DNA from: Camelus dromedarius
Lineage: Eukaryota
Reading direction: 5' to 3'
Assembly: GCF_036321535.1 (NCBI RefSeq)
Contig: NC_087449.1
Span: forward strand, 25,172,001-25,236,000
Length of the DNA stretch: 64,000 bases
The position numbers and the translations under genes were made by a program. A model generated the notes under the pieces. The model was not told where the DNA came from, ran no database searches, and worked only from the letters and a program-made list of their open reading frames with translations. Of the stretch, positions 8,937-45,560 are shown piece by piece; the first letter of the stretch is position 1; every line of letters starts with the position of its first letter.

Positions 8937-9338
<402 letters not shown>

Positions 9339-13967: not shown

Positions 13968-14072
<105 letters not shown>

Positions 14073-16250: not shown

Positions 16251-17239
16251 CTTATAACCACTCCATTCCACTGGAATGTGAGCCCAGAACGTAGTGAGAT
16301 GTAGAAACATGGCCTGCCTCCCTGTCATTGTCACTTCTCTAGAATTCATTCAACAAATATTTGCTGAAACTGGCCAGATGCCTGACACCGTTCCCCGCAG
16401 TGACTTTTAGAAAGCAGCTTGGTCGCCTCTAGAAAAATAGCATCTAAGGTTTCCATGACCCCCATCCCAGGCTTTCCAGGACTTTAAGCCAAGGCTCCAC
16501 TGATGAATACATTTGTCAAGTGCCTGACAGCACAGCCTCCAAGCAACATAAATCAGGCTCTCTGGAGACAGGTATTAAGCTCAGGCCTGGGGAGAGACCA
16601 ACAGGTATTTTAATTAGCTTCCCTCATTGCCTTCACGGAGCTTACAATGTGCTTTTGGAAGACAGGACACATGTGCTAATAGTAAGGAATGAGACCAGGC
16701 AACACAGTTCATTCCACAAGTATTTCTGCAGTGTCCGCCGTGTGCTGGTGCCGGGTTTGCGTAAGAGATACCACAGTGACACGGTTCAGACGGCCACTTC
16801 ATCATCTACTTGGGGAAACAGAATGGTGACAAGGTAGCTCAGTACCGACAAAGGACACAGGACACCAGAGCTGGCCTTAGGAAGTCAAGGGAGGCTTCCA
16901 GAGAAAGAAGTGAAGCTCCTGAACTGGAAACAGAGAGATTAGTGGATGTTAGCCAGGAAGGAGGAGGCGTGAGAGGTGAGGAGAGAGTGTGCCAGGCAGA
17001 GAGACCAGTGTTGCCGAGGCTGGAAGCTTCGAGAGCCGGCATTTGGGGACCTTCATTCAGTCTGATAGAACCGCTGTGTAGAGTTCAAGTGAGATGCCGA
17101 GATTAGAAGGTGGATTTGGAAGAAATGAGACTGAAAATACATGGGGACCAGATCGTAAAGAGCCCCAAAGCTGTGATAAGGCTGCGTTCTAAAGGCAGTG
17201 AAAGGTTATTGCTTATGATTGAGAAATTCATCTAATCTT

Positions 17240-18560
17240 CATCTAACACAGGTATGTCCGATACTTACTCCCGTCCAAGTACTGTGTTTGGGGCTGGGGA
17301 CATACATTACAGTTTAGCAGGGAAGAAAGACAAGTCATTTCGGCCCAGAATGATGCATGCTGCAACTGGGAAAGTGCAAGGTTTGGTGGGGACACATAGG
17401 TGGGAGCCCCAGGGTGTCTGAGGGTGGGGAGGGGGTCCAGGAAGGCTTCCTGAGGAATGTTTAAGCTATCTGACGGATGACTAGGCATTAGCCAGGTGAA
17501 GAGGAGCTAAGGAAACAAAGCCTCAAGACTAGAGTGAACACTGACTTGAGGCATTAGAAGAACTTCAGTGCTCCTGGGGTAGAAAAAAGGAAGACTTGCA
17601 AGGTGAGGCAGGAGAGAAAGCCACTGCAACAAGTTTGGACTTGAAGGAAATAGGAACATGGGAAGTGATGCTCAGATTTATATTTTAGAAAGAGGGACTC
17701 CAGGTTTGGAGGCATGAGGGACATTTATTCAACAAACATTTGTGGACTATCTATTCTCGGTCCCAGGCTCCAGAGTTCATGGTTTGGTGGAGGAGACAGA
17801 CCTAGGCTGACAGCGACTGCAGCAGGATGAATAATGGAGGTCTGAATAGTGCTGTGGGGACCGGCTCGGCCAGAGGGAATCAGGGAAGCCTCACGGAGGA
17901 GGTGGCCTTTGAGCTAAGCCACAGGGATGTCCAGGAGTTTGCCCAGGCAGTCTAGACAAAACAGCAGGCATAAAGATGCAAAGGGTGAGAGAGCATGGCC
18001 TGCCCTTTCAGAGTCATTTCAGAGTGACTTGGGTTTAGTTTGCATGAGGGAAGTGACTGGAGAGGACATCTGAGAGGGAGGTCAGTGAACATATCTCACC
18101 TGTATGTTGAAATTAGGAATTTGGACTTGAGCCTGTAACTTGAGGGGGAATCACACAGACTCCTTAGAGAATCTGAAGATCTCTTTGGAAAAACTGCACA
18201 TATGTGCCAAATTTGCATGTAATTTCAGGGATTCCGAAATCTGTAGTTAAAATCTCACTGCCCTGGGCTGTGGGGAGCCACTGAAGAATTTCTGAACAGT
18301 GGAGCCACATGATCAGATGTGCACTTTAGAATGATCATGGGACGGGGGAGGCTAGAGAGAGACGGGAGGCAAAAAGATTTGCTAAAACGTTCTCCTAAGA
18401 CACTGGATATGAAGCTGAAAGGGCCCGTTCCATTGTGGCATCAGTAGGAATAAAGAATAGGGTGCTGTGGGGCAGGCATTAGGCGTGGGCATGCGCCAGC
18501 TTGTGATGACAGACTGGATGGTGGAGAAGGGTCAAAAATAAGTGGCAGGAAAATGCTGAT
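17240..18560 (+). mobile_element. Fragmented L2 LINE
   Basis: L2 3' motifs (atttattcaacaaacatttgtggac, ggaaggcttcctgaggaa, tttagaatgatca) with a small hAT fragment inserted near 18120-18260. Confidence 0.55.
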
Positions 18561-18569
18561 GCCACTGTC

Positions 18570-19030
18570 CCCAATATCCTTTCTTTCCTTCCTCCTTAGT
18601 AATAGAATCCCCAGCTTTTAGCTGGGCACATTGCCACCCAGAAGAGACTTCACGTCCCAGCCTTTCTTACAACTTGATGTGGCCATGTAACTGGATGAGC
18701 GCCCTCAGCATCTCATGGCAGGCTCAAGGGTCTAAGCCGAGGGTGGTGGATTTCAGGGGAAATGCTCAGGGAGGAGCATCATCTCAATGGCGAGGTGTAA
18801 TGGACATGTCCTCTGGTACCGGCCCCCGTTCCACAGCCACAGTGAAGTCACCCCACCCACAGCCTGGCAGAAGGTGAGGCTTGTGTCACTAGAGCAGATT
18901 CCTGAACACAGGCTCCGGGCCACAAGGCAGCCACTCCTAAAGCGAGACAGTGCCCGTGAACTGGCCTGGTATGGAAATGTGGGCAGGACCATTGAATTAT
19001 CTGAGAAATTTAAATGCAGAAACACGTAGA
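18570..19030 (+). mobile_element. MLT1 (MaLR) LTR, MLT1J/K-like
   Basis: taatagaatccccagctttagctgggcacattgccacccag...cccagcctttcttacaacttgatgtggccatgtaactg. Confidence 0.65.
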
Positions 19031-19074
19031 GTTTTAGGCAGTAGCAGTAGATTATGCTAGGGAGAGAGAAGAGG

Positions 19075-19300
19075 AAGAAGCCAAAACTTATGGTTACCAA
19101 AGTGGGGGAGGGTAAATGAGGAGCTTGCGACTAACATACACAAAAGAGATAACCAACAGCTCAGGGAACTATATTCAATATCTTGCAATAACCTATAATG
19201 GAAAAGAAACTGAAAAAGAATATATATGCTGTACACCAGAAACTAACACAACACCGTAAATCAACTATACTTCAATTAAAAAATAAATTAAAAAAAAATT
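19075..19300 (+). mobile_element. L1 3' end fragment with A-rich tail
   Basis: aaacttatggttaccaaag...aactatattcaatatcttgcaataacctataatggaaaaga...cttcaattaaaaaataaattaaaaaaaaa. Confidence 0.85.
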
Positions 19301-20895
19301 TTAAAAGCAGCCTTGGTCCCTGGTCACTGAAGGATGAGCACTGGAACTGACTGAGCCCATAAGACCTTCTCCTAGGAACTCTGAAGCTGGGATTTTGAAA
19401 GAGATTCAGTCTCCTTCTGGGTGTCCGTGTTATAAGATGTCACTCTCAAAAGCTGCTAATAGCCAAGGTCCGCCACGTGGACTGAAGAGCAAAAGGGACT
19501 CTTCAGCCAGAAAGGCTTCCTGGCTTCACCGGAGCGAGCCTTGCTCCCTCCTAAGACCTCAGCAGATGCCTAACCTTCAACTCCATAACCACCCTAGCTG
19601 TTTTCCTTTCCCAGCCTCCTCTCAGGTTGTAGGAGGTGACAAGGGCAGGGTGTCTGGAATTGGCTCTCTCGGGGGTAGAATCTCAGCTGAACGTCTTGGC
19701 TACTCAGGCTCCTGAGCTGTGCACTAGGGGATGATGGTTCCTTCTCTGTTCTTTCACGAGCTTGATTAGGTAAGGCATCCTCTTTCAAGCTTGACCCCAA
19801 TGACATAACTCGATATACAGAAGAGTACTTTCCTTTTCCTCTGGCCGTTTGATTTTTTTCTCTAGACCTGGTCCCATAAAAATAGAAGCTGACCTTCACT
19901 GAGTATTTAGAACTACCCAGACATCAGTCTTAATAGTGTTGCATGAAATCAATTGCTCCTTATAACAACCCTTTGAGGTAGCCATTAATATTGTCCTTGT
20001 TGAACATATAAAGAAACTGAAGCACAGAGACGTTAAGTAACTTATCCAAGGCCACACAGCTAGTAAACAGCAGATGTGGGATTTCAAGCAGTGGATCTGG
20101 CTCCGTGACTCCACTCCACCACTTGCCGTTCCATCCGGAGCTCTTCTTGCTCCCTCGATAGTGACCCAGGCAGGGGACGGGTGCCCGCAGCAGGGGATGG
20201 AGACTGCTGAGGGAACAAAGTTGCTTCAGGGACCCAGCATTAAGTCAGTGGCTGACCTGTAGGTCCTGCTGGGTGGCCCTGGGACAGAGGAGACAACAGG
20301 CACAGTGTTTGGGACTGGAACAGCTGAGGGGTTGGGACCTCCGTGTGCTCAGCATTCTTGGGGAAGACAGCAGCCGTCTCTGCAGGGTACAGATGGTCTG
20401 AAGCCACACTGCCTCAATGACCCCCTCAGTAGGGAATTCCTTATAAGTCCAAATTAGTTTCTTCACCCCCTGTTCCCCCTGAGAAAGATGGGCCTGGGAT
20501 AGAGGGGGCCCAGCCAGTGATGGAGGGGCTCCTGCCTGCTCCACATCCACGCTCAGTGAAGGCCTGGAAACAGCTCCTGGGCCTTCGCTCCAAAGCAAAG
20601 GGAAACATCCTACTGCTGAGTAGGGGGTGGGGGAGACATTCTCCAGTCTTCCTTTTGCCTTAGAAGTGAGGAAATTTCCACTCTTCTCTCCAGAAAGGGA
20701 AGCTCTGAGAAGAAACTGGAGTCCCTCTCCTGCTACCTCTGTGGTCGGGTCCGGAACTGGATAGGCACGAAGCCCAGCCCAGTCTCTGCTCCGCCTGCCC
20801 GCAGAGAGGATGCACAATGATCTGCCTTCCACCCCGCTGGCTCAGCAGGGCAGGCCGGCCGCGTAGGGGACTGAGACTCTGATCACCACTTCCAA

Positions 20896-21667
20896 TGTGG
20901 GGGGCGGGGTTGTTTCCCTCATCCAAGCCATTCTTGGACACTCCCTGGGTGTTCTGCCTTCAACTTAGTTCTGACACCATGTATCTGGAAATGGCATCAG
21001 ACTCATCAGGTTAAGGGCTCAGTCCCACAAGACTGCCCTGCACTTCAGATGCCAATCACAAGCCCAGGCTGTCACCTGTGCTTCTGACCCACTGACCCCA
21101 TGACCTCCTCCTTGAGTTCGATTCATTTGCTACAGCAGCTCACAGAATTCAGAAAAACACTTACTTACTAGAACACCGCGTTATCATAAATGGATATAAC
21201 TCAGGAGCAGCCAGATGGAAGAGACGCAGAGGGTAAGGTGTGGGGAAGGTACACGGAGCCTCCTCGTCCTCTCGGAGAGAGCCACTCTCCCGCATCTCCA
21301 CGTGTTCACCAACCAGAAAGTTCTCTGAACCCTGTTCCTTTGGGTTTTTGTGGAGGCTTCACTACTTAAGCACGACTGATTAAATCATCGGTCACTGGTG
21401 ATCAGCCTTGATCTCCAGCCCCTCTCCCCTGCATCCTCAGAGGGAGGTCAGGAGTAAGACTTAAAACTCCAACCCTTTAATCACATGGTTGGCTCTCTGG
21501 CAATCAGTCTCCCTTGTTAGGTCCATCTAAAAGTCATTCATTTACATAACAAAAGGCACCTTTCTGGCTCTCATCACTTAGAAAATTCCAACAGTTTTAG
21601 GAGCTCTGTGTCGCAAATGGGACCAAGTCCAAATATATATTTCTCATATATAAATCGCAATATCACA
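20896..21667. mobile_element. MER21-like ERV LTR
   Basis: TG..CA bounded; contains ggttaagggctcagtcccacaagactgccc and cagatggaagagacgcagagggtaagg, characteristic of MER21. Confidence 0.75.
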
Positions 21668-21899
21668 GGGACATTGCAGGGGAAACTGGCTCCACCTGTG
21701 ACCAGCGTGCATGTGTGATTCTGGGCTCAAGTGTTAGATACCCACTGTGTGCACTTAAGCCACATCCCTTTTTCAAGCTGTGATCAGCAATAAAGTTGAC
21801 GTTTCTGGTATCTCATCTCTCATTTGCTTCCCAGCTTGGGAAATGAGAAAAGTAACAGTATGTATTGTCCCCAAACTCCTGAGTGCCACCGCCAATCAG

Positions 21900-22300
21900 G
21901 CATGATCTAGGCTTACAAGCACTCAGAGCCCAGCAGGGAACAGACATGGGACCCAAGGGATGGGATCAGCCACGTCCTCTCTCCGAACTTCCAGTGGCCC
22001 TGGGCACTTCTTGGCCTGTGGCAGCATCACCCCAATCTCTGCCCCCATCTTGGTGTGGCCGTCTTCTCCCTGCGTGGGTCTTCACGTCATCTTCCTTCTG
22101 TGAATGTCTATTTCCATGTCCAAATTTCTTCAAAAGGATGCCAGTAATAGTGCATCAGGGCCCACCTAAGAACCTACTTTTGATTGGACACCTCTGTAAA
22201 GATCCTATTTCCAAATAAGGTCACAAGCTGAGGTACTAAGGGGTAGGACTTCAACACATCTTTTTTGGGGGAAGCAGGATCCAGTTCAACCCATAATACG
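21900..22300 (-). mobile_element. MLT1 (MaLR) LTR
   Basis: ctctgtaaagatcctatttccaaataaggtcaca...ggacttcaacacatctttttt...ttcaacccataata. Confidence 0.7.
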
Positions 22301-22594
22301 TGCTTTTGTTCCTCTCTTCTTAAGATGCTCTGCCCTCCAGGTCTCCCTCTTCCTCACCACTAATGCCTACCTTTCTTTTGTTGCACCTCACCGTAACCTC
22401 CTCTGGGAAGCCTTCCGTGACCTCCGCCCCCAGCACCCCTGCAGACACCTGCCCAGCCGTGCAGTCCTTGTAACCTCCACGTCAGTGCCGCTCCAAGTGT
22501 GCCTGAACTTTTCAGTAGTTTGACACTTTGCAATCAGCAGGCTTGTATTGCATTTGTTTTTAATTTCATTTTCCTACTTGTTAATTTTTATGGA

Positions 22595-23022
22595 TGTTGT
22601 GGGTTGAATGGCGGTCCTCAAAAATATGTCCTTGTCCTATTTCCTGGGAACCTGTGAATGTGACCTTGTTTGGAAAAAGAGTCTTTGCAGATGTAGCTAA
22701 ATTAAGGATGACAAGATGAGATCATCCTGGATTATCCAGGTGACTCCTATGTCCAATGTCAAGAGTCCTTAAAAGAAACACACAAAGGGGAGATTATGTG
22801 AAGATGGAGGCAGAGATTAGAGTGAAGCCACCACAAGCCAAGGAGCACAAGAAGCTGGAAGAGCAAGAATGATTCTCCCCTAAAGCTGCAGAAGGAGTAC
22901 AGCCCTGCCAGCATCTTGGTTTCAGACCTCTGGCCTCCAGAACGGAAAGAGAATACATTTCTCTTGATTTAAGCCATTCAATTTGTGCTAATTTGTTGCA
23001 GCAGTCAAAGAAAATGAAGACA
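22595..23022 (+). mobile_element. MLT1C/D (MaLR) solo LTR
   Basis: tgttgtgggttgaatggcggtcc...gtgaatgtgaccttgtttggaaaaagagtctttgcagatg...tttaagccattcaatttgtg...gaaaatgaagaca. Confidence 0.85.
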
Positions 23023-25859
23023 ATGGCATTTCACAAAAGCATTGGTCCACAATGGATCTGGGGAGGGGGGGAAATTGCTTCTTAATCACATCTTGTTTAA
23101 GAAGAACTATTCTACGTAATGTCATTGCACATAACACAGTGTATTTTATCTGTTTAATTGTCTTCCCAACTCAGCTGTGGACTGTGGGCAGACAGGGTGA
23201 CTCCATGTTCTTCAGCTTTTAATTTCCATTGCCTAGTTTCTGGCCTGATAAATACCAGACAATGATAAATTGAATTTACATGGAGGCCCAGGTGGATCAC
23301 CTAGGGCCATGTATATTCCACTAAAGACTAAGTAAGGCCTTTGTCCTATTGGACCAAAGTCCTTCTAATCCATATCCCCTTTGTCCGAAGTCCAAATGGG
23401 TTCCACAACTTGGGGAGAGGCTGAAATGACAGGTGAGATGGTCAGATGCTGCCTTCCCCGCAAACAGCACCAGGACAACCTGGTGGTCAGACAAGACGGA
23501 GCTCATTCTTTTCTCAGTAAGACTGAGTCTTAGTAGTGTCTTGGAGAGGGGAAGGCAGGGGCGGGATATCTGTAAGGTTCTGGGGTCTGGTTCAAGGCAG
23601 TTCTTTCAGTGAGGGGCTTGATTAGGGTTGCATAAGGATCGTGAAATGATCCTTTAAGATTGACGTCCACAGCAAGGGAAGCAGCAAGAGTTCAGAGAAT
23701 CTTGGGGAGTAAAGTGTTATTTGATGTTTCCTGTTGAAGAGTTGAACAATTGAATGATCATTTAAGTAGTTTTTTTGAAACTTTGAGGAATAAACAATAG
23801 TTACTTCAATTTTCATCTTCTGGGCAAGAGTTTCCTGAAATAGTCAGCTTTCGCTGATGAAGAGAGTGGAACAGTAAAGTCATATTAACCTAGACAGAGC
23901 TGTGTGGGAGGAGATGGGTATCAGGAGTTAGGTGGCCCAACTGAGGGAGGAGGGAGCCGGGAAGGTTCAGAGCTGGTGGGCCCAGACACCTATCAGTTGC
24001 TTATCAAGATGCTAAAAAATAATCTTGCAAAGGGAAACACCCACCCCTCATAACCACATAACACAACAGTGCCATCTGAATACACGCTCACTGTTCTCTT
24101 GGCATTGACTCTTCATCACGGGCCCCATGGGAAGCCCTTAGGTCTTTCTCTCCCACCTTTCTCTTATTCTGGCCCTGGGTTAGCATCGACTCAATCATGG
24201 GGCTAGAATAGGTGCCTAAAGTCTGGTCGGGCCTCCTCGATTCTCCCACAGCCCACCATAGTCAGTGCGAGCATTGGCTGGTGGGCAAGTCACATATGAC
24301 TGCAGGAGTGACCTTTTCCCCACTCCCCCTGGAAACAGGAGACCTGCCCAATAGCTTCCAAAGTGATTACCCTGTTGCAGACACCAAGCAAAATGAGCAG
24401 GCCTAGTGGGGCTGAGTGCTGACGCACGCGGGAAAGGTCAAGCAATACTGGCGAGCACACAGCCTCTGTTTGGGAGAGACAGACGCGTCTGGCCCCAGAC
24501 AAGACCTAATCTAATTTTTAAGCAGGAAGAACATAGCTCCCTGCGACAGAACACCAGACCTGATTTGCCTAGAAATGTATTGGGAGTGGGAGGTGGGGGA
24601 GGGGATAACTACATGTATCTAGGGTCTGCAAGGCATTTTTTACACATCATTCCGTGGAAAAGCTTAGCATAGCCACAGTTTGCAAACTGAATATATTTTC
24701 AGCACTCTGAGACCTCTGTTTAAAAGAAATTTGTAGTAAATCTTCCCTAAAATGAAGGAAATATTCCCTGTTTTTTTTTTCCCTTTAGTTGACTCCTCTT
24801 TGATAAACACTGTTATCCGAAAGAAGGCACCACTCGATATTTTCCACTGCGTACATGCTACCTGGACAGGTAAGGTGAAATGTGACCTCCCAGTCCCAAC
24901 AACAGCAACAATTCCCTAATATTTTGTTTGTTGTGAATAAAATGAAAAGATCTGAGGGGTGAAAAGCCCACTGATTCCAGAACCTATGTCCCATCAGTGC
25001 TTCTGTTCTGCTCTGTAACACTCACATACTTGTTTAGTGTTAGGAACGAGGGAGCCCTCTGGAGAGGAGTCCTCACCAGCGTTTTCCCTCCTGCACCCAT
25101 GTGCAGCTGCACCCTGTGGACTCCCCGCAGCCCAGGGCACCCTGCCCCGCGGCTTCCATGGCGGCTCTCCCTGCTTGTCCTCCTCCAGGGCTCCAGCCCT
25201 GGCTCCTCACTTTAACGCCCATTAAATACAGTTTTATCCTTGACTCTGCTTCTCTACCCCACTCTCCCTTTGAACGCTCAGGACTTCTACAATTACTTTC
25301 ATCCAAACTGTTTTCACTCCCGCTTCTCTGTCCTGACCCTCCTGAGCTCAGTCATCCCACCTGACCTGAGTGCTGATTGTGCAGAAGTGCTTGGTGTCCT
25401 GCCCTGGCCACTGCGTCTAACACCCTGGTCCTGGCATCTGCCTGAACCCCTCTGAGCTCGTGGCATTTTACCCTAAAAAAGTCCATCAAGGGCTCCCCAC
25501 AGATTATAGAAATTCTCTAAAATGTAGCCTTGGTTTCAAGATTCAGTGTGGCCTGGCTTCCAAACAGCCACTACTATTTCATTTATTTGTTTGTTTATTT
25601 GTTTGTTTAGTCGTATCCTGCAGCTAGACAACATCTCCATTCTTTCCCTACCTCTGAGAACTTGCAGTGTTTCCTCAGCTGTTACAGTGTTTTCATGCCC
25701 TATTTTTGCACATTCAGATCTCACCCAGGATTCTTATCTAATCCTTTGGGTCTAAGGTACCAAAATGCCTTAAAAAGCAAATAAATTCCCAAAGGCGTCT
25801 CCAGTGGGTGTAATATCCTGGAAGGTCAGCAGATGGCACATATCCACTTCCTTAGAGGA

Positions 25860-26340
25860 AAACCCAGTTACATTAACTGTCATTGCAGAAAAGATACATA
25901 AGGACTCACCTCTTTCAAGAAGTTAGAAAAATAGTAAAATAAACCCAATGAAAATATAACAAGGGAAACAGTACAGTTAAATTCATAAATTATTAATAAA
26001 ACAAACAAAAAAAGAACTTATAAATCGAAAGGCTGGATCACTGAACGATATGGGTGTCAATAGCACACCTTAAAGAAGAAACAGAAGAAGAAAGCACAAA
26101 AACACAAAATTAGGATAAAGAGAAACTTGCCCCATATATGGAGAAAATGTAGATAGATGAGAGACTGTTACATACCGCTACAATCTAATATATAAAAAAC
26201 TGAATGAAATTGATGATCTACAAAAATATATATAACCAAAATTGGGTTGGAGAGAGATGGAAAAAAACCTAAAGAATTAATCACGTGCAAGAAATTAAGA
26301 AAATTCTTCTCAGAAACTCTAGTCCCACATCATTTTGAGA
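25860..26340 (+). mobile_element. Old L1 ORF2 fragment
   Basis: A-rich degenerate ORF2-like sequence (aaaaactgaatgaaattgatgatctacaaaaatata...ccaaaattg). Confidence 0.55.
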
Positions 26341-27790
26341 GAGGTGATTAGGCAAGCTTCCTGACCCTGGCTGATCATTAAAAACGGGATGATTTAACAC
26401 CAGGCCTTGAAAAACGGGATGATTTTTTCTCGCAGCTGGCGCCTTCATTCCAAGAACGTAACCGGCATTTCTTTCTTTCTTCTCTTTCCCACCAAAGTTT
26501 CTGAGGTAGGGCCAAGCTCAATGAATGAAAAAGCCTATGGTAGGAAGAAGGTTTCAGCACCACCAGAATGAAGACACGATGGCAGAACCCCCAATAAAAG
26601 CCCCATGGCCCATGGTGACTGGCTTCTGGATTTGTCTGTTATTTTAGAATTCCAACTCAACAGCCATCCCTTACATTTTGTATATGTAAATCCAAACACT
26701 ATTCAGTATTGTAGAATAATTTGCATGTGAGAGCTTATTTAATTTGGGTACACATTTTTGAGTACCAGGAACTGGGAAGAAACAAACTAATTTAAACCTT
26801 CTAGAAAAACAGACAGTAGTAAACCTACTGCCTGAAAGCTAAGGGCTTGCCTTCCAGAATCAAGAATGGTGTGTGGTGTTATCCACTGACTTGGTGGAGT
26901 CGCAGCTCTGCTCCCAGGACTGGCACATGGATCCAGCTAAGCAAGCTGAGCCCAGACCCATCGTGCCCAAGCACTTTCCAATCCCTTGTAACCCTCCGCC
27001 AGCAAAAACCTGCCTCTACTCCTATTGAACTCGGTCCTTTCTGCTGGAAAAGCGTCTCATTGGTTTTTCAAGCCCAAGATGTCCAGCGCCCCTTGACGCG
27101 ACATGTGTGCCGCTGGGCCGCCTTGACCTTTCCAGCGTTTATTAGCATTCACCCCAGCCAGGCCTGCTGGTTTCCCCGACAAGTGGCAGGTTTGGAAAAG
27201 GTTACCAGTGTCCTCGCCTACAACTGCCTCGTCAGGCACACGAACAGTACAACAGACTCTGCTGTGACACTTTGAGCTGATCTGACTTCAGGCTTTTTGC
27301 TTTGGCTCTGTGAGATGGAACCAAGGCTAAACAGGAAGGCGTGGGGGGGCGGGGAGGGGGCGGTGTGCAAAGACACGGGAGGCCGCGAGAGGAATACGCA
27401 GTCTCGGCTTCGGGGACGAAGCCACTGCTCAAGAGAACGGGGCCCTCCCACAAACACCTCGATATTTCAATTTTTTTTTTCTTGTGAAATTTGGAGAAAT
27501 TAGATTGGGAGCGTGTGTGAGAGAGTGGACTTTCCATTTTCAGGATCTAATTTTTTAAGTGCTTCTCTAAGAAATTGGTATCTTGTCATTTTCAGACCCC
27601 ACTGGGCTGGCAGGCTTTTGGTGGGGCCAACTGACTCTCACCTGCCATCTCAGCAACTTGATTGGCAGGTTGGGGCCAATCCTGACCTCAGACAGCATTT
27701 TAAAAGCTCCAGCCAAGTACACTGCTGTCTATAAGGAAGCGTCAGTCTTTCAGGTCTCAACAACACGGCCCTTCGATTACTGATGTTGGG

Positions 27791-34365: not shown

Positions 34366-34609
34366 CACAGAAGATAAGCCGTCCTGCAGGAGGAACCTCA
34401 AATGCACAGTGCCAAGTGAAAGGAGCCAGTCTGCCAAGGCTACAAGGCTCCTTTTTACATACTGTATGGTTCCAGCTGCATGCCATTCTGGAGAAGGCAA
34501 AACTATGGAGACAGTAAAAAGATCAGCCCTTCACACGGACTCGATGGAGAGGAATGAACAGGCAGAGCACCGAGGGTTTTTAGGACAGTGAAACTATTCT
34601 GTGTGATAC

Positions 34610-35217: not shown

Positions 35218-35429
35218 GTTCCCCCTTTTCTTTGATGCTTCTCAGTCCTGAGTGGAAGGGGGTGACGACCCACTCTGGCTACTTCCAGCTGAACAGGGGT
35301 GACATTAATTCTTCGGGATTAGAGGAGAGAAAATCTTGGACCTTCTTTTCGAAGAATTCTCGAGTCCCAGGCCTAACATCAGCCTTTTATTATGAAAACA
35401 TTATCTCCCTCTTTGGTTGCCTTGTCACA

Positions 35430-36200
35430 GCACTTGGGTAAATATTTGAAAATTAATAAACACATTGCGAAGAGGATGACGAGCAAAATGGAGCCTTGTA
35501 ACAATACCCAAGAACCCCCCTAGTCCAGACGGCAGCCTGTAAATAAGTCGCGGTGCGTATCCTCTTTACGTACATCCTGTAACCAGGCAGCCTTTTGAAT
35601 GATTCTATTTACTCGGTTTCAACTCCTCCTGAGGTAGTGAGATGTGTGCAGCACGTGGTATGAGCCACTGCACACTCTCCTCCTCATTTTGCAGCTAAGA
35701 AGTCAAGGGCTATTCTATTATCGAGGACCACTCGAGCCAGTGAGTCCAGAGGTTTTTGACGGGCTGCAATACTTATAGCTGTGTCCTTGGCAATTTGTCC
35801 AGTTGTGGCAGATGGGTTATGAATCATATGTCTATTGACTTCCACTCTGGCACTTGGTGTGAGGTTGCTAACAATGCTTTGTCCTATACTGCCCTCATAC
35901 CCTGCCAATATCTCTCTTTTAGGGTGGGGGTTTGCTCTAGAGAGGGAAACCATGTTCTCCGGGCTGTGCATGGAAAGAGGGTCCTAAAATATCCCAGTAG
36001 GCATGACCCTTCCATTTTCCAGCTGTCTAAGCAGCAACATGCCCATCCTTGAGTTGGTGAGTCACTTCCTATGCCAGAAACAAAGATACATCCCAGAGGG
36101 GCACAAGTTACACCTCCCAGGGTAGTGCCATTGACTCTTTCATTTTGGGGGATCTGAGAGATTATGTTATCAAGCTACGGCGAGAACCTTTGCAAGCCTT
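35430..36200 (-). pseudogene. Degenerate class I ERV env (SU C-terminus + TM)
   Basis: CAPLGCIFV...GWACCCL...GSCLLGY, then a frameshift near 35980, HPKR furin-like site, ISD SLARVVLDNRIALDFLAAK, in-frame TGA at 35684-35686, CAVAHTTCC (CX6CC), then a frameshifted hydrophobic anchor LLQGSILLVILFAMCLLIFKY. Confidence 0.88.
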
Positions 36201-36489
36201 CCACAGTCTGTTTACATGATATCCAATGTGCTTGGCTCTGTGGCATAAATCAGTGTCATTTTTTAGCCCTTACACATTGTCAGTTGTGCATTTCAGGGGA
36301 TTTGGGGCATCACACTTTCTCATGAGAAATGTGAGGGACTTTGAGGGGACCAGTAGTAACTTTTCTTGCAGTGGAAATCCCCTCAGACAAGTTGAAGCAA
36401 AGGGTTAGGGTATTCTGAGGTCCTTCGGTTATCTGAACTTAGAATGACACCAAGTTGTGGGGAAGGGTGACAGTGGTAATTTGCAGGGA

Positions 36490-36646
36490 GTCAAGCAAGG
36501 AGTTCGGGTCCCTTGAGCACTAGCTGCCTATGCCCCTTGCTGGGTGCCCTGCAAATAGTGCTGTACTTCGCTTCACCACAGCCCAGTGCCTGTAGATTGG
36601 CTTTGCTGCGCGTCAGGTGAGTGAACTGGAGCTCGGATCAGTAACA
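36490..36646 (+). mobile_element. Partial LTR (R-U5), same MER41-like family, opposite orientation to the env provirus
   Basis: gagcactagctgcc...cttcaccacagcccag...cagtaaca, homologous to the 41345-41838 LTR and to the reverse complement of ~34625-34720. Confidence 0.7.
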
Positions 36647-36659
36647 AGACTGCTCTGTA

Positions 36660-37900
36660 CGTATATGTCCTACAAAAATACTATTAAAGCAAAACACCAA
36701 GGAAAACTGAAAATATGGGCAAAATTACACAGATAAATGCAGACGAAATTAAAGCACAAAGAAGTCACTACTGGACAATAAAGCATAATTCAAGTTAAAA
36801 CTATGAAATGAAACAAAGTTTTTCAGTTATGGTAATCCACAAACATTTGGGTCTTTGTGCCCCAAACAACATGGCTAAATCAACACCAAGAAAAGCAGAG
36901 GCAAAAGGTTGAGATAAAAGGAGAAATTTAAAAGAAAATTGTAAAAAAATAAAATTAAAAGCCAAGTAAGAATTTTCCTTAAAGAAAAAAAATGACAACT
37001 TGCCAAGTAAGCATGCAAAAGGACCCAGTGTGAGGATTTAAAAGATAATTTGCAACTGTGTGGTAGGAAAGAAAAAAGCGAGATGAAGTAAATGATATTT
37101 TAGCAAAACTTTAAAATAAATATTGATTCAAAAAATAAAAACAAACAAAAATCCTCATTGGATAGATATAAAGGAAAATCAATAAAATGTTCAACGTTTA
37201 AAAAACAGTTCCATGTCCAGAACTTTTCATTTAACGATATAGAATAGACAATTTTCATTAAATAGTTCTGAGCTGCAAAAAAGCTAAAACAGAGAAGTAC
37301 TTCACAGAAGAAAGAATAACAAATACTAAACCACCACAAAATCATTAATGTTTCTATATTAAAAGTTTATATAAATTGATAAACTAAAATTTTAAAAAAA
37401 CAGGAATTGCAAAGCAATAAATACTAAATATGAAAAGTTGCCCAAGTCCAGAAATTGGCACTATAATTGAAAAAATAGCATTGCTTTTATCTATCTGTAG
37501 CGGGAATAGTTATAACTTTCCAGGAACGTGGAAAACCTATTAAAATGAGAAATAATGCATAGACTCCCCTTGAGAATCTAGACCAGGAGTAAAACCGCCT
37601 GTACTTAAGAATACACGAACAGAAGCTTTAGTATTGAGCTTTTTGAGACAAAACCCCAGAAAACAATGCCTTTTAATAAAGGAAGGATTGAGCCATAAAA
37701 GCTCTATGTCCACCGTGGAATCAGAGACACTGGTCAGGGATGTCGTTGGCACATTAGAGGGAAAAACAAGCTGCAGATAATGTAGATAGCACAATCCCAT
37801 TTTTGTAAATACACACAAAACCACAGAAGTGAGAATGGAGAGAAAACAGATGAAAATATGCTCAATTTTGTTAGCAGGGGGATGTTTACAAAACTAGCTC
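36660..37900 (+). mobile_element. Old L1M/L1ME fragments
   Basis: Very A-rich degenerate ORF2-like and 3' L1ME motifs (atagcacaatcccatttttgtaaa). Confidence 0.55.
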
Positions 37901-38355
37901 CAGTGTTGGAGAGAGCTGACCTTGGCCAGGGCTGAGGCAAATACCCCCCCCTCACCTTGGAAGGGGCAGCAGGGACTGCTAGACCTTTTTGGTAATTAAA
38001 GTGTGTTCTCCCCCTGCACCCAGAAACCTGCCCCACGCTCCACTCCCCAGCACTGAGCACCTTCATGGTGCATAGAGATGTTGCACCAAACTCTGGGTGC
38101 TCGTGAGAATGAGATAGGAATATGAACTGTTCTTCCCCTAGCGAAAAGCAAGTCCACAAAACGGCCAGCAAATTCAGAAGAAAACAAACAAAAAACGCAT
38201 AGTAAGAACAGGCTGCCTATTCTGAAAAGTTAATTCACCATATAGGAAACATAAGTACATAATAAACATATGAAACAATGGCAGTCACAAGCCAAGAAAA
38301 TGCAAATCAAAACAAGCTTTTTTCCTTTCTGGAGATTACGGGGAATTTGATTTAC

Positions 38356-39340
38356 TGTGGCGCAGCCTCGCAGGGAGACAGGGTAAGAGTGCCGGGACTG
38401 GAGACCTACGAACACAGCCAAATTCAACTGACGACTCACTCCATGTATTGCACACAATCACACAACACAACTTAGTCAAGCAAGTAGGAGAAAAGGTGGG
38501 TAAGGAACCACTCTGAAGAGGGATCTGGAAGGAGGTGGCCCAACAGGAGCGGTGCCCACCGCTGCCTCCTTCCCGCAAAGGGTCTCAGGACTAGAGTGAG
38601 CAGGACGTCACCGTCAGCTCTGACAGAGCCTCCAACAGCGTGGGCTCGGTCCCATGGCGACCTAGAGGCTTGGAGATGCTCAGCTCAGTGGTCTCATTGT
38701 AAGTAGCCTCCAGTAGGGTGTACCAGTTAAGCTCCGGGGGGTCTAATCTCTATCAGTTGCTCTTGTTCCAGTGAAGTCTTTCCTTGGACCTTACCAAAAA
38801 AATCCTTACCCATATTAACCCTCTTAATATATCACACTTAAACATTCACAATCGAACATCAGATGTTTAAAAACAGTCATCATGGAGGCTCACACTAACC
38901 ACTGTGACTCCATTTTGAACTACTTAACGTAGACTAAAGTCAGACAAATGGGTAGGAATCACATGACTAAAAGTCACATTAAAACATTCGCCACCTCCCC
39001 ACACCCTCCACCCCCTTCCCCGGCAATACCCTGGGTGTACGAATTGGGTTTCTCACCCTTCCTATCTGATTCCCGTCCCCAAAGGTCACCCTCCTGTTGT
39101 GTATTGTTAGAGTAAGTTCCTTAAAACACAGATCAGCACTCATCACCGCACTGATTAAAAGCCTCTGGGGTCTTCCTTCTCTAAACCTCTTTTGATGGCC
39201 AGCCAAGCCTGCCCTGAAACTTGCCAAGTCTGCTCCAGTCTTGGTGTTTAAAGCTTGCTTCCCACCTTGATTAGGGATTCTGAACCCAGAGTGGATAGAA
39301 TTTCCGGGAGTGTAGGATATTGGGTGGCAAAGTGACCACA
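38356..39340 (-). mobile_element. LTR (38356-38755) + PPT + internal fragment, copy A
   Basis: Minus strand TGATAGAG...GCGCCACA, preceded by purine tract GGAACAAGAGCAAC. Internal sequence homologous to copy B. Confidence 0.6.
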
Positions 39341-39751
39341 TGTGTTTTCATTCATATCTGGATGGAATTCAGCATGAAACAGTTATCAAAATCATACATT
39401 TGAGATACAGACTATGTGAACTTCTTAACCTACTATTTAGCAAAATTGAGTGGCAGTTCTAAAGTAGTTTTTAATTTTACTTCAGAATGTAAAATTGTGT
39501 CTCCTGATACCTGCAACCACTGTAACGTGACATGAAAATACCTGATTTCTAGTGGTGACAACCCGTGAATTCTGCTCATAATATCAGACTAGCAAAGCGC
39601 CAGGTTAAGGATGCCCACCTTAGTTTATCTGCTGCAAGACTCATTCCTCATCTGTCCAGTTCCCCTGATTCACTCTAGACGATCTGTGCTCCCACACCTG
39701 CCTTCCACGTCTCCAGTTACCAAGCCACTCAACTACCAAGTCTTAGCTGCT

Positions 39752-40198
39752 GGTAAAGAGAAAAACCACCGGCCCAAAATGGCATCACTTATACTAAAGC
39801 CCAGGACATCAAACCTAGACTTAATACTTGACTTACAGTTTCCAACTTCCCAGAAATGTAATCTTAACCAACAAGTTTGGAATTTTCTGGTCAGCACCAA
39901 AGAGGTGATCCATCCCGTGGATCACCTCCATCCCCGTCCCCTAGAGGAAGAAGCAATCTTCATGACAAAACTCCTGCCATTCCGTTTCCCCCAAAAGACA
40001 TCCTCGCCTAAAAACAATCCTTTCTTTTCTTTCCCTAATGGTCCCCCTGGCCCTATTTTCCTTCCTATAAAACCTCCCATCTGATTCAACAGCTCTGAGC
40101 CCTTCTGGTTGCTAGACATGAGGCTGCCCAGTTCATAAACTGCCTAATAAACCCAAATTGATCTTCAAATTTACTTGGTGGAATTTTGCTTTTTAACA
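39752..40198 (+). mobile_element. ERV1 solo LTR (MER39/MER4-group-like)
   Basis: TATA (cctataaaacc), aataaacccaaattgatcttcaaatttac, ends ttttaaca. Confidence 0.7.
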
Positions 40199-41344
40199 AC
40201 TGCTCACCTGCTGGGGGGTCCTTGTCCTGGAAGGAGGATATGTTCTCTGCAGAGCAGGACTCAGTCACCTGTGCAGCTGCGTCTCAGTGCCTAGAGTTCA
40301 AGCAAAGCCCATGGTACAGATTTCAAAGTTCAAGGTTTAGTACACAGAAAAGTACATTTTGTACACAGGGGAAGAAAAAGTTACTTTTCTAGCTACATGT
40401 TTGCTTAAATCTATATGAATATAGCAGTAAACATATTATTCATTTTGTTGTTTGAAAAAGAATTCAATCCATTTTTCTAACAACGAAGCTAGCTACTTCC
40501 ACATCTATCTCCCAGTCAGAAATACTCTGAAGAAACAGGCTGGAGATGAAGCTCAAGGCCTCCCATCGAGGAAGTGGAGGAGACAGAGGGAAAGCCCTGG
40601 TCCTCCAGGCTCCGAAGCTCTTGCTTACACCATCGCTTGCAAAAGACCTTGTAAATTTCACCTCGCAGCCCTGTTTTTAAAGCTAGTGCTTAAGCACTTC
40701 CTCATTTCCTCCTGGACTTCATTGTCTCCTCATGGCACTACTATTTTAATGTCCTCATTCTGGGGTAGAGGATGCTTTAGGAAGGTGCCTGTCTCACAAG
40801 CTGGTGAGAGACAGAGCAGGTTCAAATTTAGAGGGGCCTAGGGCAGCCCCTAACCCCACGTCCCGTGCTTCGGCCAGCCTTACCTGCGGAGATGATCCAG
40901 CAAGAGGACTCAGCCCCGAGCCAACTGAGGAAGGAGGCCGGAGGACTGATCAATTGTTTGCTGGCTCCTCCCCTCCTCTCAAGGAGTTTGCAAATTCCTA
41001 AGCACAACACCTTTGCCATCCACGGCCCCCCCACCGCCCCCACTCCCCCTGTAGCCTCACCAGGCAGGCCTCATCCAGTCCTGAAGCCACTGCCGACTTC
41101 CAATCGCTGGACCCCTGAGCTCCAGCTCCAGCTCTGATTCCTCTGCGTCTCTGGATGAGCCCGCCCCACCCCGACCCCACCATCTGGACTCGAGGCTTTC
41201 CATGCAATAAAGGCACCACTAACTGCCAAGTTATTCAGCCATAAGCCCAGGGGTCAACCTAGATTCTGCTCTTTTCTTTAATCCCCGTGTTTATCCATCC
41301 CCAAGCCCTTTGAGTTTGTCCACTTCTTTCTCTCTCCATGGTTC

Positions 41345-41838
41345 TGTAACTGAGCAGGACTGTATGGTGTCTTCCAAGGACAAACTCTCCCGCCACGTCC
41401 TCTGCTTTAGCTCCTCTCTGAAGTACCTAGATCGTAGTATTAGATGCACATCTCCTGAGTTGTTTTACAGACACTAAAACCCCCTCCAGGTGGAAGAAAT
41501 TAACTACCTGACGACCATGAGCACAGAGCCCTCAGACCTACTGGAGCTTGAGGACTGATAATGTTAACCCCGTGACACAACCCTGTTATCTCACTATCAG
41601 CCAATCAGAGAATTATGCACAAGCTGATCGCATACCCTGGGACTTCCCTCCCTCACCCCGCCTTTAAAAATGTTTTCCTGAAACCCATCAGGAGTTCTGG
41701 TGTTTTGAGCACTAGCTGCCCTGGACTCCTTGCTGGGCGCCCTGCAATAAACGGTGCACTTTCCTTCACCACAGCCTGGTGTCAGTAGACTGGCTTTACT
41801 GTGTGTGGGCGAACAGACCCGAGTTTGGTTCGGTAACA
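41345..41838 (+). mobile_element. Complete MER41-like ERV1 solo LTR
   Basis: TGTAAC...GGTAACA, with CCAAT, tttaaaa and gcaataaac. 4-bp flanks gttc/gctc form a TSD with one mismatch. Confidence 0.85.
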
Positions 41839-41850
41839 GCTCCCAGTGCT

Positions 41851-42900
41851 TGTCGCGGGGCCCAGCAGTGAGGGCAGGCAAGAATCACGGCATTGGAGAC
41901 AGACGAAACACAGCCAGTGTTCAGTTCACCAGTCACTTGGTTTGCTGCATACAATTCGCACGCAAGACAGGTTAGTGAAAGTTGGGAAAATAGAAAAGGG
42001 GATAAGGAACCACTCCAAGGAGAAGTCGGGGCAGCACTGGTCTCCCGCTAGCAATGGTGAGTGGGCAGTCGCCCTCTGCCCCGATAGGGTCTCTGACCTC
42101 GTCCCTCTGGAAAGGCTCTCAGCAAGTGGTGTTAAGTGATCAGCGAAAAGTCTTATTTTAAGGAGTAACATTTACCCCAGGGGAGGAGGCTTGACTCCTA
42201 TCAGTTGCCTCTTCTGTTCCAGTGACTTACATCACCCATCACACTTCTCTTGGTTTATCCCTCTAAGACACAGTCCCACAGCGGATGGTTCAAGACCACA
42301 AATGTGGAAGTTCCCATTGGCCACTGTGACTCCATTTGGAACTACTTTACATGTCTTAACATAGCTTAAATCCTGTAAGTTTCACAGACGATGAGTAAGA
42401 ATCATAACACAAGAAATCACATCACAACATCATTTATAACTAATACTTGAAACGTTTACAACAGTAATGGTACTTAATCTAAGAAGCTCAATTTACATTT
42501 CGTGTTACATCTCAACACATCTTAATAACAGAAGCAGTCAAAATACCTATGGCTAAAACGATCATGTCAAAAACGTATAAATGCTTAGTGTTAGCATGTC
42601 CACATTCAGTTTTGGCTGTAAAGGTCGTCGGCTGCGAAAAAAGAACGTTTGGCTCACTCCATTGGTAGAGCTCTCCCTGCTGAGACGGCTTCTTCTTGGT
42701 ATTTCCTTTGTGATCATATGCATGGAGCTGAGTGGGGAGGTACTCAGGCTAATTCCAAAAAACAAAAAAACAAAAAAAGAGCGCACAGCCGAAAGCTATA
42801 AAGAAGTAGAAAGGTAATGCACCTGCCCAATATTTTTGAGGCCAATCATTTAAGACTAAGTAGTTTAGCCACGACTCAGGAATAAAAGCCTGCACGCGAC
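41851..42900 (-). mobile_element. LTR (41851-42203) + PPT + internal fragment, copy B (distal end approximate)
   Basis: Minus strand TGATAGGAG...CCCCGCGACA, preceded by GGAACAGAAGAGGCAAC. Shares ccactgtgactccattt and taaggaaccactc with copy A. Confidence 0.6.
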
Positions 42901-43658
42901 ATAGTGTGATGCCAGAGTGGGAAGTTAAGAAAAGAACAGAGTGTTTACGGATTGCCCTTTCTGGTGACAGCCAACGGTGATTTTTCTACCATTGTCCTTG
43001 TGACTTGGCACATTCTCAGTGTCGCGTCTGTGCAAGAAGGTGAGAGAGGACAAACTGAGGGAAAGATCATGGCGCCATGGCTCCCAGCCCGCACTCTGTG
43101 GCTCTTGAATAGTTTTAAGAGACTCAGTTCCCAGGGTCTCAGCTGCCATGTGTATCTAAAGCTGATCTCCCTGAGAAGGCGACTGGGCTATGGCCTTCCC
43201 ACGTCTATTTCGCAATCCTTCTTTTCCTGCTTTACAAAATAGTGACTGGATTCACCATGGGAGAATCCCCCATCCCCCACCCCGGGTATAAAAGTCTGGT
43301 GGAGAGTGCCTGCTTCTGAGTGGGAACCTCTCACATGCTCAGCCTGGAGGCTTCCAGGAGAAACGCTGGAAGAGGAGCTGCTTCATCTCACCCAGGCAAC
43401 AAGCCTCTCCACCCACCCACCCACCCACACATCCATCCCTTCATTCATCCACATACCCTCCCCTCTCGTCCTCCCTCCCTCCCTCCCTCTCCCCTCCTTG
43501 TCTCTATTGGACTGAGACTCAGAAGTGGTACAGCTCCGCAGGATGTATGTTAACACCATTACTTGAACTGAAATGTGAAGTCCAAGTTTTTCTGACAGAA
43601 AGTAAGACTCATTTGATGGGACTGGCTTTGCCGCTTAGGTTATAAGGAGCACACTTAC

Positions 43659-43743
43659 CATGAACTGGATGAATTCAATCTGTTTTAGACAAAAAATACA
43701 CTTAATGAGTGTTCAGGATATTAAAAACTCTGGAAAGTATATC
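43659..43743 (-). other. Candidate 85-nt non-coding exon (putative L1TD1 exon 2)
   Basis: Minus strand: tttcaaAG|gatatac...ttcatg|GTAAGT, a perfect donor, ~1.5 kb downstream of the candidate exon 1 donor. An alternative acceptor tttccAG would give a start at 43729. Confidence 0.4.
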
Positions 43744-44449
43744 CTTTGAAATTATTTAAACTTAGGATTCAAAAATTTTAGATGGCAACCTAAAAATGTG
43801 TTTTGTGAGGAAAATGAGTAAAAAGTCTTTGAAAACCACTGTCCCTTCGGCCCCTATCTGGTCCAGAGTGACCCTAGGGAATCACCTTGGAAGCAGATCA
43901 CGAGCCACCAAGGGATTTGGGGCAAACAGGCTTCCCCTTGCGGTGTGCTCCTTGTCTGACTCCGGTCCATCTTTGAATCTGCCCAGCTCTTCAGACATGT
44001 CTGGCCTGTTAGTCTAGAAGATTTTTCCTGGTAACAGTTTGATTATCAAATTGATACCCCTGCCACCTGCCAGGACACCCTAGGCCCGAAAGGGAGAGGC
44101 ATTCCTGGACTTGTAGCATCAGAATGTTAAAGAAACCCAGCTCTGAGGCAGAGCTGAGACACACCCCTCACCTTACTCTGCTTGGGATGCTCTTTGTCAG
44201 CCCAGTTCCATCCTCTTTGTTAGGTTAATCAACTCATTTGTCAAATACTTATTGTGTACCTACTATGTGCTAAGCACTGTTTTTCAAAGTCCTGCTTTGC
44301 TGACCCTCTGCTCCTCTAAGAGGAAGCCTTGTTTGACCCTCTAGCCTGAATTACGAACTCTTCTGAGTCCTAGCATCCTGGGACTCCTGCCATTAAGGCA
44401 CTCATCTCTGTGTGCGGTCAATGTTTTCTTGGAATGCAGTAATGCCCAC

Positions 44450-44690
44450 TCATAAGAAAGCTGGCTCCAGATTCAAACTGTTGAGTTGACACAACACTTT
44501 ACCAGCTGCGTGATCTTCAGTAAGTTAGTTAACCTCTCTGTGCTTCCATTTCTAAAATCTATAAAGTAGGCAAAATAGTACCTACCTCATGGGGTTGGGA
44601 GAACTTGACATAATTCAGTTAAAGTGCTTTTCACATTGCTTAGAACTCAGTAATACAAGCGTCCTGCAATGTTTGCTAAATACATGAAAG
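44450..44690 (-). mobile_element. MIR SINE
   Basis: cttaccagctgcgtgatcttcagtaagttagttaacctctctgtgcttccatttctaaaatctataaagtagg. Confidence 0.7.
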
Positions 44691-45253
44691 CATAGAGAAT
44701 CCAAGTTTACCTCAACATTTGATGCCCATTCTCTCAGATTTTTCCTAGCACTTTCCTACTTACATAAAATATGAATCCTTCACCATCGGTGAACTTTCTT
44801 TCTCTAGGGATTTTAATGAGATTTGAATTAAATATAAAAAACAATTGGAGAGGAGTGATATATTATTCAGGCTTTCTAACAATGGAGATGAAATCCTGTC
44901 AGGCAAATTCCTTAACCTCTTTGTGCCTCCGTTTCCTGTAAGATGAGAAATACTGTGGTCCCTGCCTCACAGGCTGTTGATTAAATGAAGTAAAATAAGC
45001 GAACGCACTCAGAACAGCCCCGTGGTGGAGCGGCCTGTAAGTGCTTGCTGTTAATATTGTTGGTATCATCATTTATTTTAACTTCTGGCAGTTCTTCCCT
45101 CAGGTCTTATACATTTTCCTTTTTTTTTTAAATTTTTTTTTATTTTGGTGAATATTATTTCTGGGAACTACTTATTTTCATTGCTATTGTGAATGATACC
45201 CTCCCCCCCACCCCCCCGCCCCAATCTACGTCTGGTGCGTGGGAAAGCAGTAC

Positions 45254-45560
45254 CTGATAGCCTACAGCCAGTAGCTGACAGCCCAGCATCTCCTGGGAAA
45301 GACAGACCTTGCAAACAGGCGGACTGAAACACAATACGTGAATTGAAAAGATAAAGGCAAGCCTGGGTTCTCTGAATGGCCGAGAAGGCTGTCCGCCACA
45401 CTTGCGGGGGTGGGCGGAGGCGGGGTGCTGAGCAGGGTTTCTTGGAAGCTGTAACAGGCGGCTGGGTCTTGGAGGACAAGGCCTTCTGCACACGCTGTGG
45501 GAGCTGTGCTCCCTTGGATACATACGTAGGCGGGGCCCCGGGGTGGGCTCCGCCCCCAGC
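45254..45560 (-). promoter_or_regulatory. CpG/GC-box promoter plus candidate non-coding first exon (putative L1TD1 5' end)
   Basis: Local CpG enrichment, GC boxes GGCGGGG (45529-45535) and CTCCGCCCCC (45548-45557), and a minus-strand donor CAG|GTACTG with exon end at 45254. Assignment to L1TD1 rests on synteny and orientation only. Confidence 0.45.

What the first reader, a model, noticed from the sequence alone, without database searches (positions are those of the whole stretch)
16300..45560. L1TD1 coding sequence is missing from its conserved slot between KANK4 and PATJ: candidate lineage-specific gene loss in a camelid
Seen: the KANK4 3' end (+) and the PATJ 3' end (-) are both in the window, with no N gap between 6623 and 62788. 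No ORF in the interval exceeds ~195 aa. I could not find L1TD1 motifs (L1 ORF1 RRM/CTD-like sequence or the Glu-rich tract) on the minus strand by eye. Established: in human the order is PATJ-L1TD1-KANK4, and L1TD1 (a domesticated L1 ORF1p, ~865 aa in two large coding exons, linked to pluripotency) has been lost several times in mammals (McLaughlin et al. 2014, PLoS Genet). I do not remember whether camelids were scored there. Inference: the coding exons were deleted or decayed beyond visual recognition.
Basis: partly seen in the sequence, partly recalled or inferred. Interest (0 to 1): 0.75.

Follow-up and report, generated by a model that had tools for sequence, protein, structure and literature searches.

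The report
Known L1TD1 loss, KANK4–PATJ gap

Summary
The window carries KANK-type ankyrin exons on the + strand, with the last coding exon ending at a stop at 14070-14072. It carries a PATJ/MPDZ-type terminal PDZ exon on the - strand (58395-58538, stop 58392-58394). There is no N between them, and the longest stop-to-stop frame (198 aa) is what chance gives.

No L1 ORF1-like or L1TD1-like coding sequence was found anywhere in the 44.3 kb between the two stop codons. Three tests agree: Pfam scans of six-frame pieces, a motif scan, and tblastn with a 75-aa panda L1TD1 piece.

McLaughlin et al. 2014 scored alpaca (vicPac2), pig, cow, sheep and dolphin as "L1TD1 not present". They date one loss to the cetartiodactyl ancestor, 64-80 Mya. 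So the loss is neither camelid-specific nor new, and pig has no true L1TD1 to use as a query.

The PATJ stop lies 12.8 kb further right.

My controls and a decay simulation favour physical deletion over decay in place. That is a small refinement of the published result. I could not verify the species.

The parts
9120..9320 (+). KANK-family (KANK4 by elimination and synteny) ankyrin-repeat coding exon, 67 aa
   Evidence: Flanked by AG and GT. Co-linear PDB matches: KANK1 5ybj 100.7 bits, KANK2 93, KANK3 86. None is at orthologue level.
13967..14072 (+). Last KANK4-type coding exon (...[34 protein letters not shown]) and its stop codon at 14070-14072
   Evidence: Polypyrimidine tract plus AG acceptor, with an in-frame stop. 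PolyA signals at 15666 and 15865.
14073..58391 (.). Stop-to-stop KANK4-PATJ interval, 44.3 kb, gap-free, with no L1TD1 or L1 ORF1-like coding sequence
   Evidence: No N. Pfam scans gave zero hits to the L1 ORF1 Pfam families (PF02994 Transposase_22 and its companion trimer and dsRBD models): minus strand >=30 aa across 14.0-58.6 kb, plus strand >=40 aa across 13.9-58.5 kb. Motif scan was below the null. tblastn with 75 aa of panda L1TD1 was below the null. No Glu-rich tract.
58392..58538 (-). Last coding exon of PATJ (second half of the terminal PDZ domain) and its stop codon
   Evidence: Pfam PDZ 5.4e-13. 81% identity to the C-terminal end of MPDZ PDZ13, 2fne. Acceptor and stop located.
32040..32312 (+). 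Decayed gammaretrovirus-like ERV integrase C-terminal fragment (an insertion, not part of any host gene)
   Evidence: Pfam MLVIN_C 4.2e-15. Piece identified.
34635..35983 (-). ERV env transmembrane fragment (35687-35983), followed by an LTR-like R/U5 copy (34635-34767) on the same strand
   Evidence: Pfam TLV_coat 0.0034. The LTR-like repeat family is 70-79% identical among copies at 34635-34767 (-), 36498-36608 (+) and 41663-41803 (+).
42515..42985 (-). Processed PIGP pseudogene (retrocopy), broken by stops and frame changes
   Evidence: Pfam PIG-P 1.2e-8 for piece 42752-42985. The reading frame is broken.
29873..30062 (-). One of four 5'-truncated L1 3'-end fragments (others at 7049-7208 +, 19158-19302 +, 46048-46116 -). 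None carries ORF1.
   Evidence: Self-blastn at 74-77% identity. The alignment ends in a poly-A tail. The L1 3'-end assignment is from memory of laurasiatherian L1 tails.
55494..55590 (+). Simple tRNA-derived SINE: a tRNA-like head followed directly by an (AAATA)n tail
   Evidence: Rfam tRNA 42.9 bits and ARAGORN. Sequence. SINEBase names three simple SINEs of this build: ID (rodents), vic-1 (camels) and DAS-I (armadillos).

Best explanation
This is the KANK4-PATJ intergenic region of a cetartiodactyl, probably a camelid. L1TD1 is absent because the gene was lost once in the cetartiodactyl stem lineage about 64-80 Mya, as already published. Nothing replaces it. The interval now holds non-coding DNA plus later insertions: gammaretrovirus-like ERV fragments, a PIGP retrocopy, L1 3' ends and a simple SINE. 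Because no ORF1-like remnant survives in a gap-free interval, the two coding exons (about 0.96 + 1.6 kb spanning about 5 kb in dog and panda) were most likely removed by deletion, not mutated away in place. Shown here: the synteny, the contiguity, and the absence of detectable L1TD1 or ORF1 coding sequence. Taken from the literature: the loss is shared by all Cetartiodactyla and no copy exists elsewhere in the genome. Inferred: deletion rather than decay, and the camelid origin.
For: The flanks are identified and no N lies between them. The Pfam scans returned no L1 ORF1 family. The same scans did recover a 48-aa half-PDZ exon (5e-13), a decayed PIGP retrocopy (1e-8), an ERV integrase fragment (4e-15) and an env fragment (3e-3). 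The ERV family's LTR-like copies are only 70-79% alike, so these are old insertions. As a positive control, a 75-aa panda L1TD1 RRM piece scores 2.2e-12 against PF02994. tblastn with that piece gives at best 18.9 bits in the window, against 20.4 bits in the reversed-sequence null. Planted decayed copies were recovered in 100% of runs at 0.2 substitutions per site, 93% at 0.3 and 60% at 0.4. I estimate the panda-to-camelid-pseudogene distance at about 0.25-0.3 (my estimate from general mammalian rates). Literature: PMC4161310, section 8 and Table S2.
Against: I could not obtain a full-length L1TD1 protein or DNA as a referable sequence. The direct homology test therefore used only one 75-aa segment (the exon-2 RRM) plus generic ORF1 profiles. 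The Glu-rich region, the N-terminal part and the UTR exons were not tested by homology. The Pfam scan can miss short partial domains: the 35-aa ankyrin half-repeat in KANK4's last exon gave no hit. Species identity was not verified. Contiguity rests only on the absence of N.
Confidence: 0.8

Rival explanations
1. Decay in place: L1TD1 was pseudogenised, and its exons are still present but have mutated beyond recognition.
For: McLaughlin et al. call this 'equally likely' for such an old loss. My homology query was short, and Pfam misses some short fragments. The simulation shows power falling to 33-60% at 0.4-0.5 substitutions per site.
Against: Old decayed coding remnants in the same interval (PIGP retrocopy, ERV integrase and env) are still detected. 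L1TD1 has four or five Pfam-detectable ORF1 modules and none is seen on either strand. No co-linear motif cluster exists. No Glu-codon-rich tract remains. At the expected divergence of about 0.25-0.3, recovery of even one 75-aa segment is at least 90%.
Confidence: 0.15
2. Independent, camelid-specific deletion: the cetartiodactyl lineages lost L1TD1 separately instead of once in their ancestor.
For: Nothing here maps breakpoints, so a shared origin is not shown by my data. The single-loss scenario in the paper is a parsimony argument.
Against: All five cetartiodactyls scored, spanning Tylopoda, Suina, Ruminantia and Cetacea, lack the gene with no trace of it. One loss is far more parsimonious than four.
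Confidence: 0.08
3. Assembly artefact: a segment carrying L1TD1 was collapsed or mis-joined out of this assembly, or L1TD1 sits elsewhere in the genome.
For: It cannot be excluded without reads. Only one window was available.
Against: There is no N and no abrupt composition break across 14-58 kb. An independent older alpaca assembly and four other cetartiodactyl genomes also lack the gene, genome-wide by TBLASTN.
Confidence: 0.03

Closest known systems
Cetartiodactyl-wide loss of L1TD1 (McLaughlin et al. 2014, PLoS Genet, PMC4161310)
   Same: The same locus (INADL/PATJ-KANK4), the same result (no L1TD1 and no trace), and a camelid (alpaca vicPac2) was explicitly scored.
   Different: This window is gap-free across the whole interval. 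I add profile-based, motif-based and simulated-power evidence that favours deletion over decay, a question the paper left open. The species of the window is not verified.
Afrotherian loss of L1TD1 (elephant, hyrax, tenrec; same paper)
   Same: Complete absence with no recognisable remnant at the syntenic locus.
   Different: A different clade and an older loss (84-100 Mya). The simple tRNA-type SINE in the window is of the kind named for camels, rodents and armadillos, not for Afrotheria.
Megabat L1TD1 unitary pseudogene (Pteropus vampyrus; same paper)
   Same: Loss of L1TD1 function at the same locus.
   Different: In megabats the exons are still discernible, with frameshifts and stop codons. 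Here nothing is discernible.

Membership tests
L1TD1 gene (intact) | Lies between PATJ (INADL) and KANK4, on the PATJ strand | tested here: met
   The slot itself is identified: KANK-type exons on + ending at 14072, and the PATJ-type last exon on - ending at 58392.
L1TD1 gene (intact) | Two large coding exons (about 0.96 and 1.6 kb) encoding ORF1p-like regions (CTD; and CC+RRM+CTD) | tested here: not met
   The longest open frame is 198 aa, which is chance level. No L1 ORF1 Pfam family hit on either strand. tblastn with the panda RRM piece scored below the null.
L1TD1 gene (intact) | Glutamic-acid-rich tract of about 300 aa in coding exon 2 | tested here: not met
   No run of six or more Glu or Asp residues in any frame. 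The most purine-rich minus-strand patch (25.0-25.5 kb) is not Glu-coding.
L1TD1 unitary pseudogene (megabat type) | Recognisable exons carrying frameshifts or stop codons at the syntenic site | tested here: not met
   Same searches as above. Caveat: only a 75-aa L1TD1 segment and generic ORF1 profiles were available.
Published cetartiodactyl L1TD1 loss | PATJ and KANK4 adjacent with no L1TD1 between them | tested here: met
   and the scans listed above.
   The tools carry no mammalian genome collection. Indirect evidence: one simple tRNA-head SINE of the class SINEBase lists for rodents, camels and armadillos, and the paper finds L1TD1 in rodents and armadillo. The look-up of a window ORF found nothing on record.
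Published cetartiodactyl L1TD1 loss | No L1TD1 copy elsewhere in the genome | not testable with these tools
   Only this window is available. The paper reports none for alpaca by genome-wide TBLASTN.

The most novel reading that the evidence does not exclude
The absence reflects a separate deletion in the camelid lineage, with breakpoints not shared by pigs, ruminants and whales. L1TD1 would then have been lost repeatedly within Cetartiodactyla rather than once in their ancestor. A weaker version: the gap-free interval settles 'whole-gene deletion' over 'decay', which the 2014 paper left open.
Probability: 0.08. Interest if true: 0.35.

Novelty: already known. Interest (0 to 1): 0.08.

Why it matters
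L1TD1 is described as the only host protein-coding gene built almost entirely from a LINE-1 ORF1, and it is needed for pluripotency in human ES cells. Its loss in whole mammalian orders shows that this role is not universal. That point was made in 2014 using these same clades, so the finding adds no new biology. Two small things are gained. First, a contiguous assembly confirms the loss. Second, the evidence leans towards deletion of the coding exons rather than decay in place.

Tried and rejected
(1) The single search of protein representatives, run with the 67-aa KANK exon, was swamped by giant multi-ankyrin proteins. It yielded no KANK4 id, so no orthologous mammalian locus could be fetched.

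(2) The look-up of encoding contigs with the 195-aa ORF found nothing on record.

(3) A full-text search for the SINE core sequence found no paper printing it. A loosely specified L1TD1/livestock search was uninformative.

(4) 'FPTKVS'/'FPAKVS' peptides in an inverted repeat pair (26336-26598 and 28001-28275) resembled the ORF1 'YPAKLS' motif. They gave no Pfam or PDB ORF1 hit even at E<=10, so I rejected them as coincidence.

(5) A purine-rich minus-strand patch at 25.0-25.5 kb was checked as a possible decayed Glu-rich tract and rejected.

(6) M2 and M3 motif hits at 60.2-60.5 kb (-) are spaced wrongly and lie in non-ORF1 sequence, so I rejected them.

(7) The PIGP piece has no PDB relative, so the retrocopy's divergence could not be measured.

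(8) Step left out: a full-length L1TD1 tblastn or DNA alignment. The only source was the paper's supplement, which has no reference id, and long sequences are not to be pasted. I used a single 75-aa segment instead.

(9) Step not taken: the homologous-protein searches. No window piece is long enough to pass the length filter for KANK4, PATJ or L1TD1.
Full report
**Observation**

The window has N runs only at 6456-6623 and 62788-62935. Between 14 and 48 kb the longest start-to-stop ORF is 195 aa. The longest stop-to-stop frame is 198 aa. The lack of long ORFs is therefore what non-coding DNA gives.

**Flanking genes**

On the + strand a 67-aa exon (9120-9320, bounded by AG and GT) aligns co-linearly to the crystallised ankyrin domains of three KANK proteins. 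The scores are KANK1 100.7 bits, KANK2 93 bits and KANK3 86 bits. None of these is at the level expected for an orthologue, which leaves KANK4, the fourth family member.

A further KANK-type exon follows a polypyrimidine tract and AG acceptor at 13967 and ends at a stop at 14070-14072. PolyA signals lie at 15666 and 15865.

On the - strand a 48-aa half-PDZ exon (58395-58538) follows a good acceptor and ends ...TVVLTVLS, with the stop at 58392-58394. It is 81% identical to the extreme C-terminus of human MPDZ PDZ13 (2fne), again below orthologue level. That fits the paralogue PATJ.

A KANK gene and a PATJ/MPDZ-type gene lying tail to tail match the INADL-KANK4 arrangement that McLaughlin et al. 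describe as conserved across mammals and birds.

The interval that should hold L1TD1, on the minus strand, is therefore 14073-58391 (44.3 kb). I found nothing that marks 45560 as a PATJ landmark.

**Search for L1TD1**

I cut all six frames into stop-to-stop pieces and scanned them against Pfam-A:
- Minus strand, pieces of 40 aa or more, 14.0-58.6 kb.
- Minus strand, pieces of 30-39 aa, same range.
- Plus strand, pieces of 40 aa or more, 13.9-58.5 kb.

No piece matched PF02994 Transposase_22 or the companion L1 ORF1 trimer and dsRBD models, at E<=1 (E<=10 for the short set).

The same scans recovered several true features:
- The PDZ half-exon, at 5.4e-13.
- A decayed PIGP retrocopy, at 1.2e-8.
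- A gammaretroviral integrase C-terminal fragment, at 4.2e-15.
- An env TM fragment, at 0.0034.

As a positive control for the model itself, a 75-aa piece of panda L1TD1's C-terminal ORF1-like region scores 2.2e-12 against PF02994. That piece came from the paper's Dataset S2.

Five short ORF1/L1TD1 motifs gave 14 weak hits in the window, against 32 in the reversed-sequence null, with no co-linear cluster.

tblastn with the 75-aa panda piece gave at best 18.9 bits (E 1.6). The reversed null gave 20.4 bits.

In a simulation I planted mutated, indel-bearing copies of that segment into the window. Recovery above the null was 100% at 0.2 substitutions per site, 93% at 0.3, 60% at 0.4 and 33% at 0.5. 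My rough estimate of the divergence between panda L1TD1 and a camelid pseudogene silenced 64-80 Mya is 0.25-0.3. This estimate rests on general mammalian rates, not on a tool.

No Glu-rich tract remains in any frame.

**What the literature already says**

McLaughlin et al. 2014 (PMC4161310) extracted the INADL-KANK4 interval from many mammals. [quoted passage not shown] They leave open whether the cause was deletion or decay. Table S2 lists alpaca vicPac2, pig susScr3, cow, sheep and dolphin as "L1TD1 not present". It also gives the two coding exons in dog and panda as about 0.96 kb and 1.62 kb, separated by about 2.6 kb.

"Lineage-specific in a camelid" overstates it, and the suggested pig query does not exist.

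**What fills the interval**

- Gammaretrovirus-like ERV debris in both orientations. This comprises an integrase C-terminal fragment at 32040-32312 (+) and an env TM fragment at 35687-35983 (-). LTR-like R/U5 copies lie at 34635-34767 (-), 36498-36608 (+) and 41663-41803 (+), only 70-79% alike.
- A processed PIGP pseudogene at about 42515-42985 (-).
- Short L1 3'-end fragments without ORF1.
- An unidentified inverted repeat pair at 26.3 and 28.0 kb.
- A weak CpG-rich patch at 49.0-49.45 kb.
- One simple tRNA-headed SINE at 55494-55590.

These elements are old, yet their coding remnants remain detectable. That is why I favour deletion of the L1TD1 exons over decay in place.

**Species**

I could not verify "camelid". 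No mammalian genome collection is available, and a look-up of a window ORF found nothing on record. The only hint comes from the SINE. [quoted passage not shown] The paper finds L1TD1 in rodents and armadillo. If the window came from a mammal outside Cetartiodactyla and Afrotheria, the loss would be new. I rate that as unlikely.

**Limits**

- The homology test used one 75-aa L1TD1 segment plus generic ORF1 profiles. A full-length L1TD1 query could not be brought in by reference.
- Pfam can miss short partial domains. KANK4's 35-aa terminal ankyrin half-repeat gave no hit.
- Contiguity rests on the absence of N alone.
- Breakpoints could not be mapped.

**Verdict**

Interest is low.

Noticed in passing
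window 42515-42985 (-): Processed PIGP pseudogene (retrocopy). Piece 42752-42985 hits Pfam PIG-P at 1.2e-8. The frame is broken by stops and shifts further downstream.
   Followed up: partly
window 32040-32312 (+), 35687-35983 (-), 34635-34767 (-), 36498-36608 (+), 41663-41803 (+): A cluster of decayed gammaretrovirus-like ERV pieces in both orientations: an integrase C-terminal fragment, an env TM fragment, and three LTR-like R/U5 copies only 70-79% alike. I described them only and did not reconstruct anything.
   Followed up: partly
window 55494-55590 (+): Simple SINE: a tRNA-like head followed directly by an (AAATA)n tail. ARAGORN reads the anticodon as Thr GGT. By my reading it looks like a mutated tRNA-Ala AGC loop. 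It is the only copy in the window and a possible clue to a camelid origin (vic-1 class).
   Followed up: partly
window 49001-49450: The only CpG-island-like patch in the intergenic interval (GC 0.58-0.60, CpG o/e 0.71-0.77), about 9 kb downstream of the PATJ stop. It could be an orphan promoter. I could not test whether it relates to the lost gene.
   Followed up: no
window 26336-26598 (+) and 28001-28275 (-): Inverted pair of an unidentified interspersed repeat, 73-80% identical and 1.4 kb apart. Its 'FPAKVS' peptide mimics an ORF1 motif, but no Pfam or PDB ORF1 hit was found.
   Followed up: yes
window 7049-7208 (+), 19158-19302 (+), 29873-30062 (-), 46048-46116 (-): Four 5'-truncated copies of one L1 3'-end family, 74-77% identical in pairs and ending in poly-A. 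No ORF1 or ORF2 domain was detected anywhere in the interval.
   Followed up: partly
window 6456-6623 and 62788-62935: The two N runs are exon-sized (168 and 148 nt) and lie inside the KANK4 and PATJ gene bodies. The first half of PATJ's last PDZ domain was not found in the readable sequence upstream of 58538.
   Followed up: no
It lies in a moderately GC-rich, non-CpG-island stretch 12.8 kb beyond the PATJ stop codon.
   Followed up: partly
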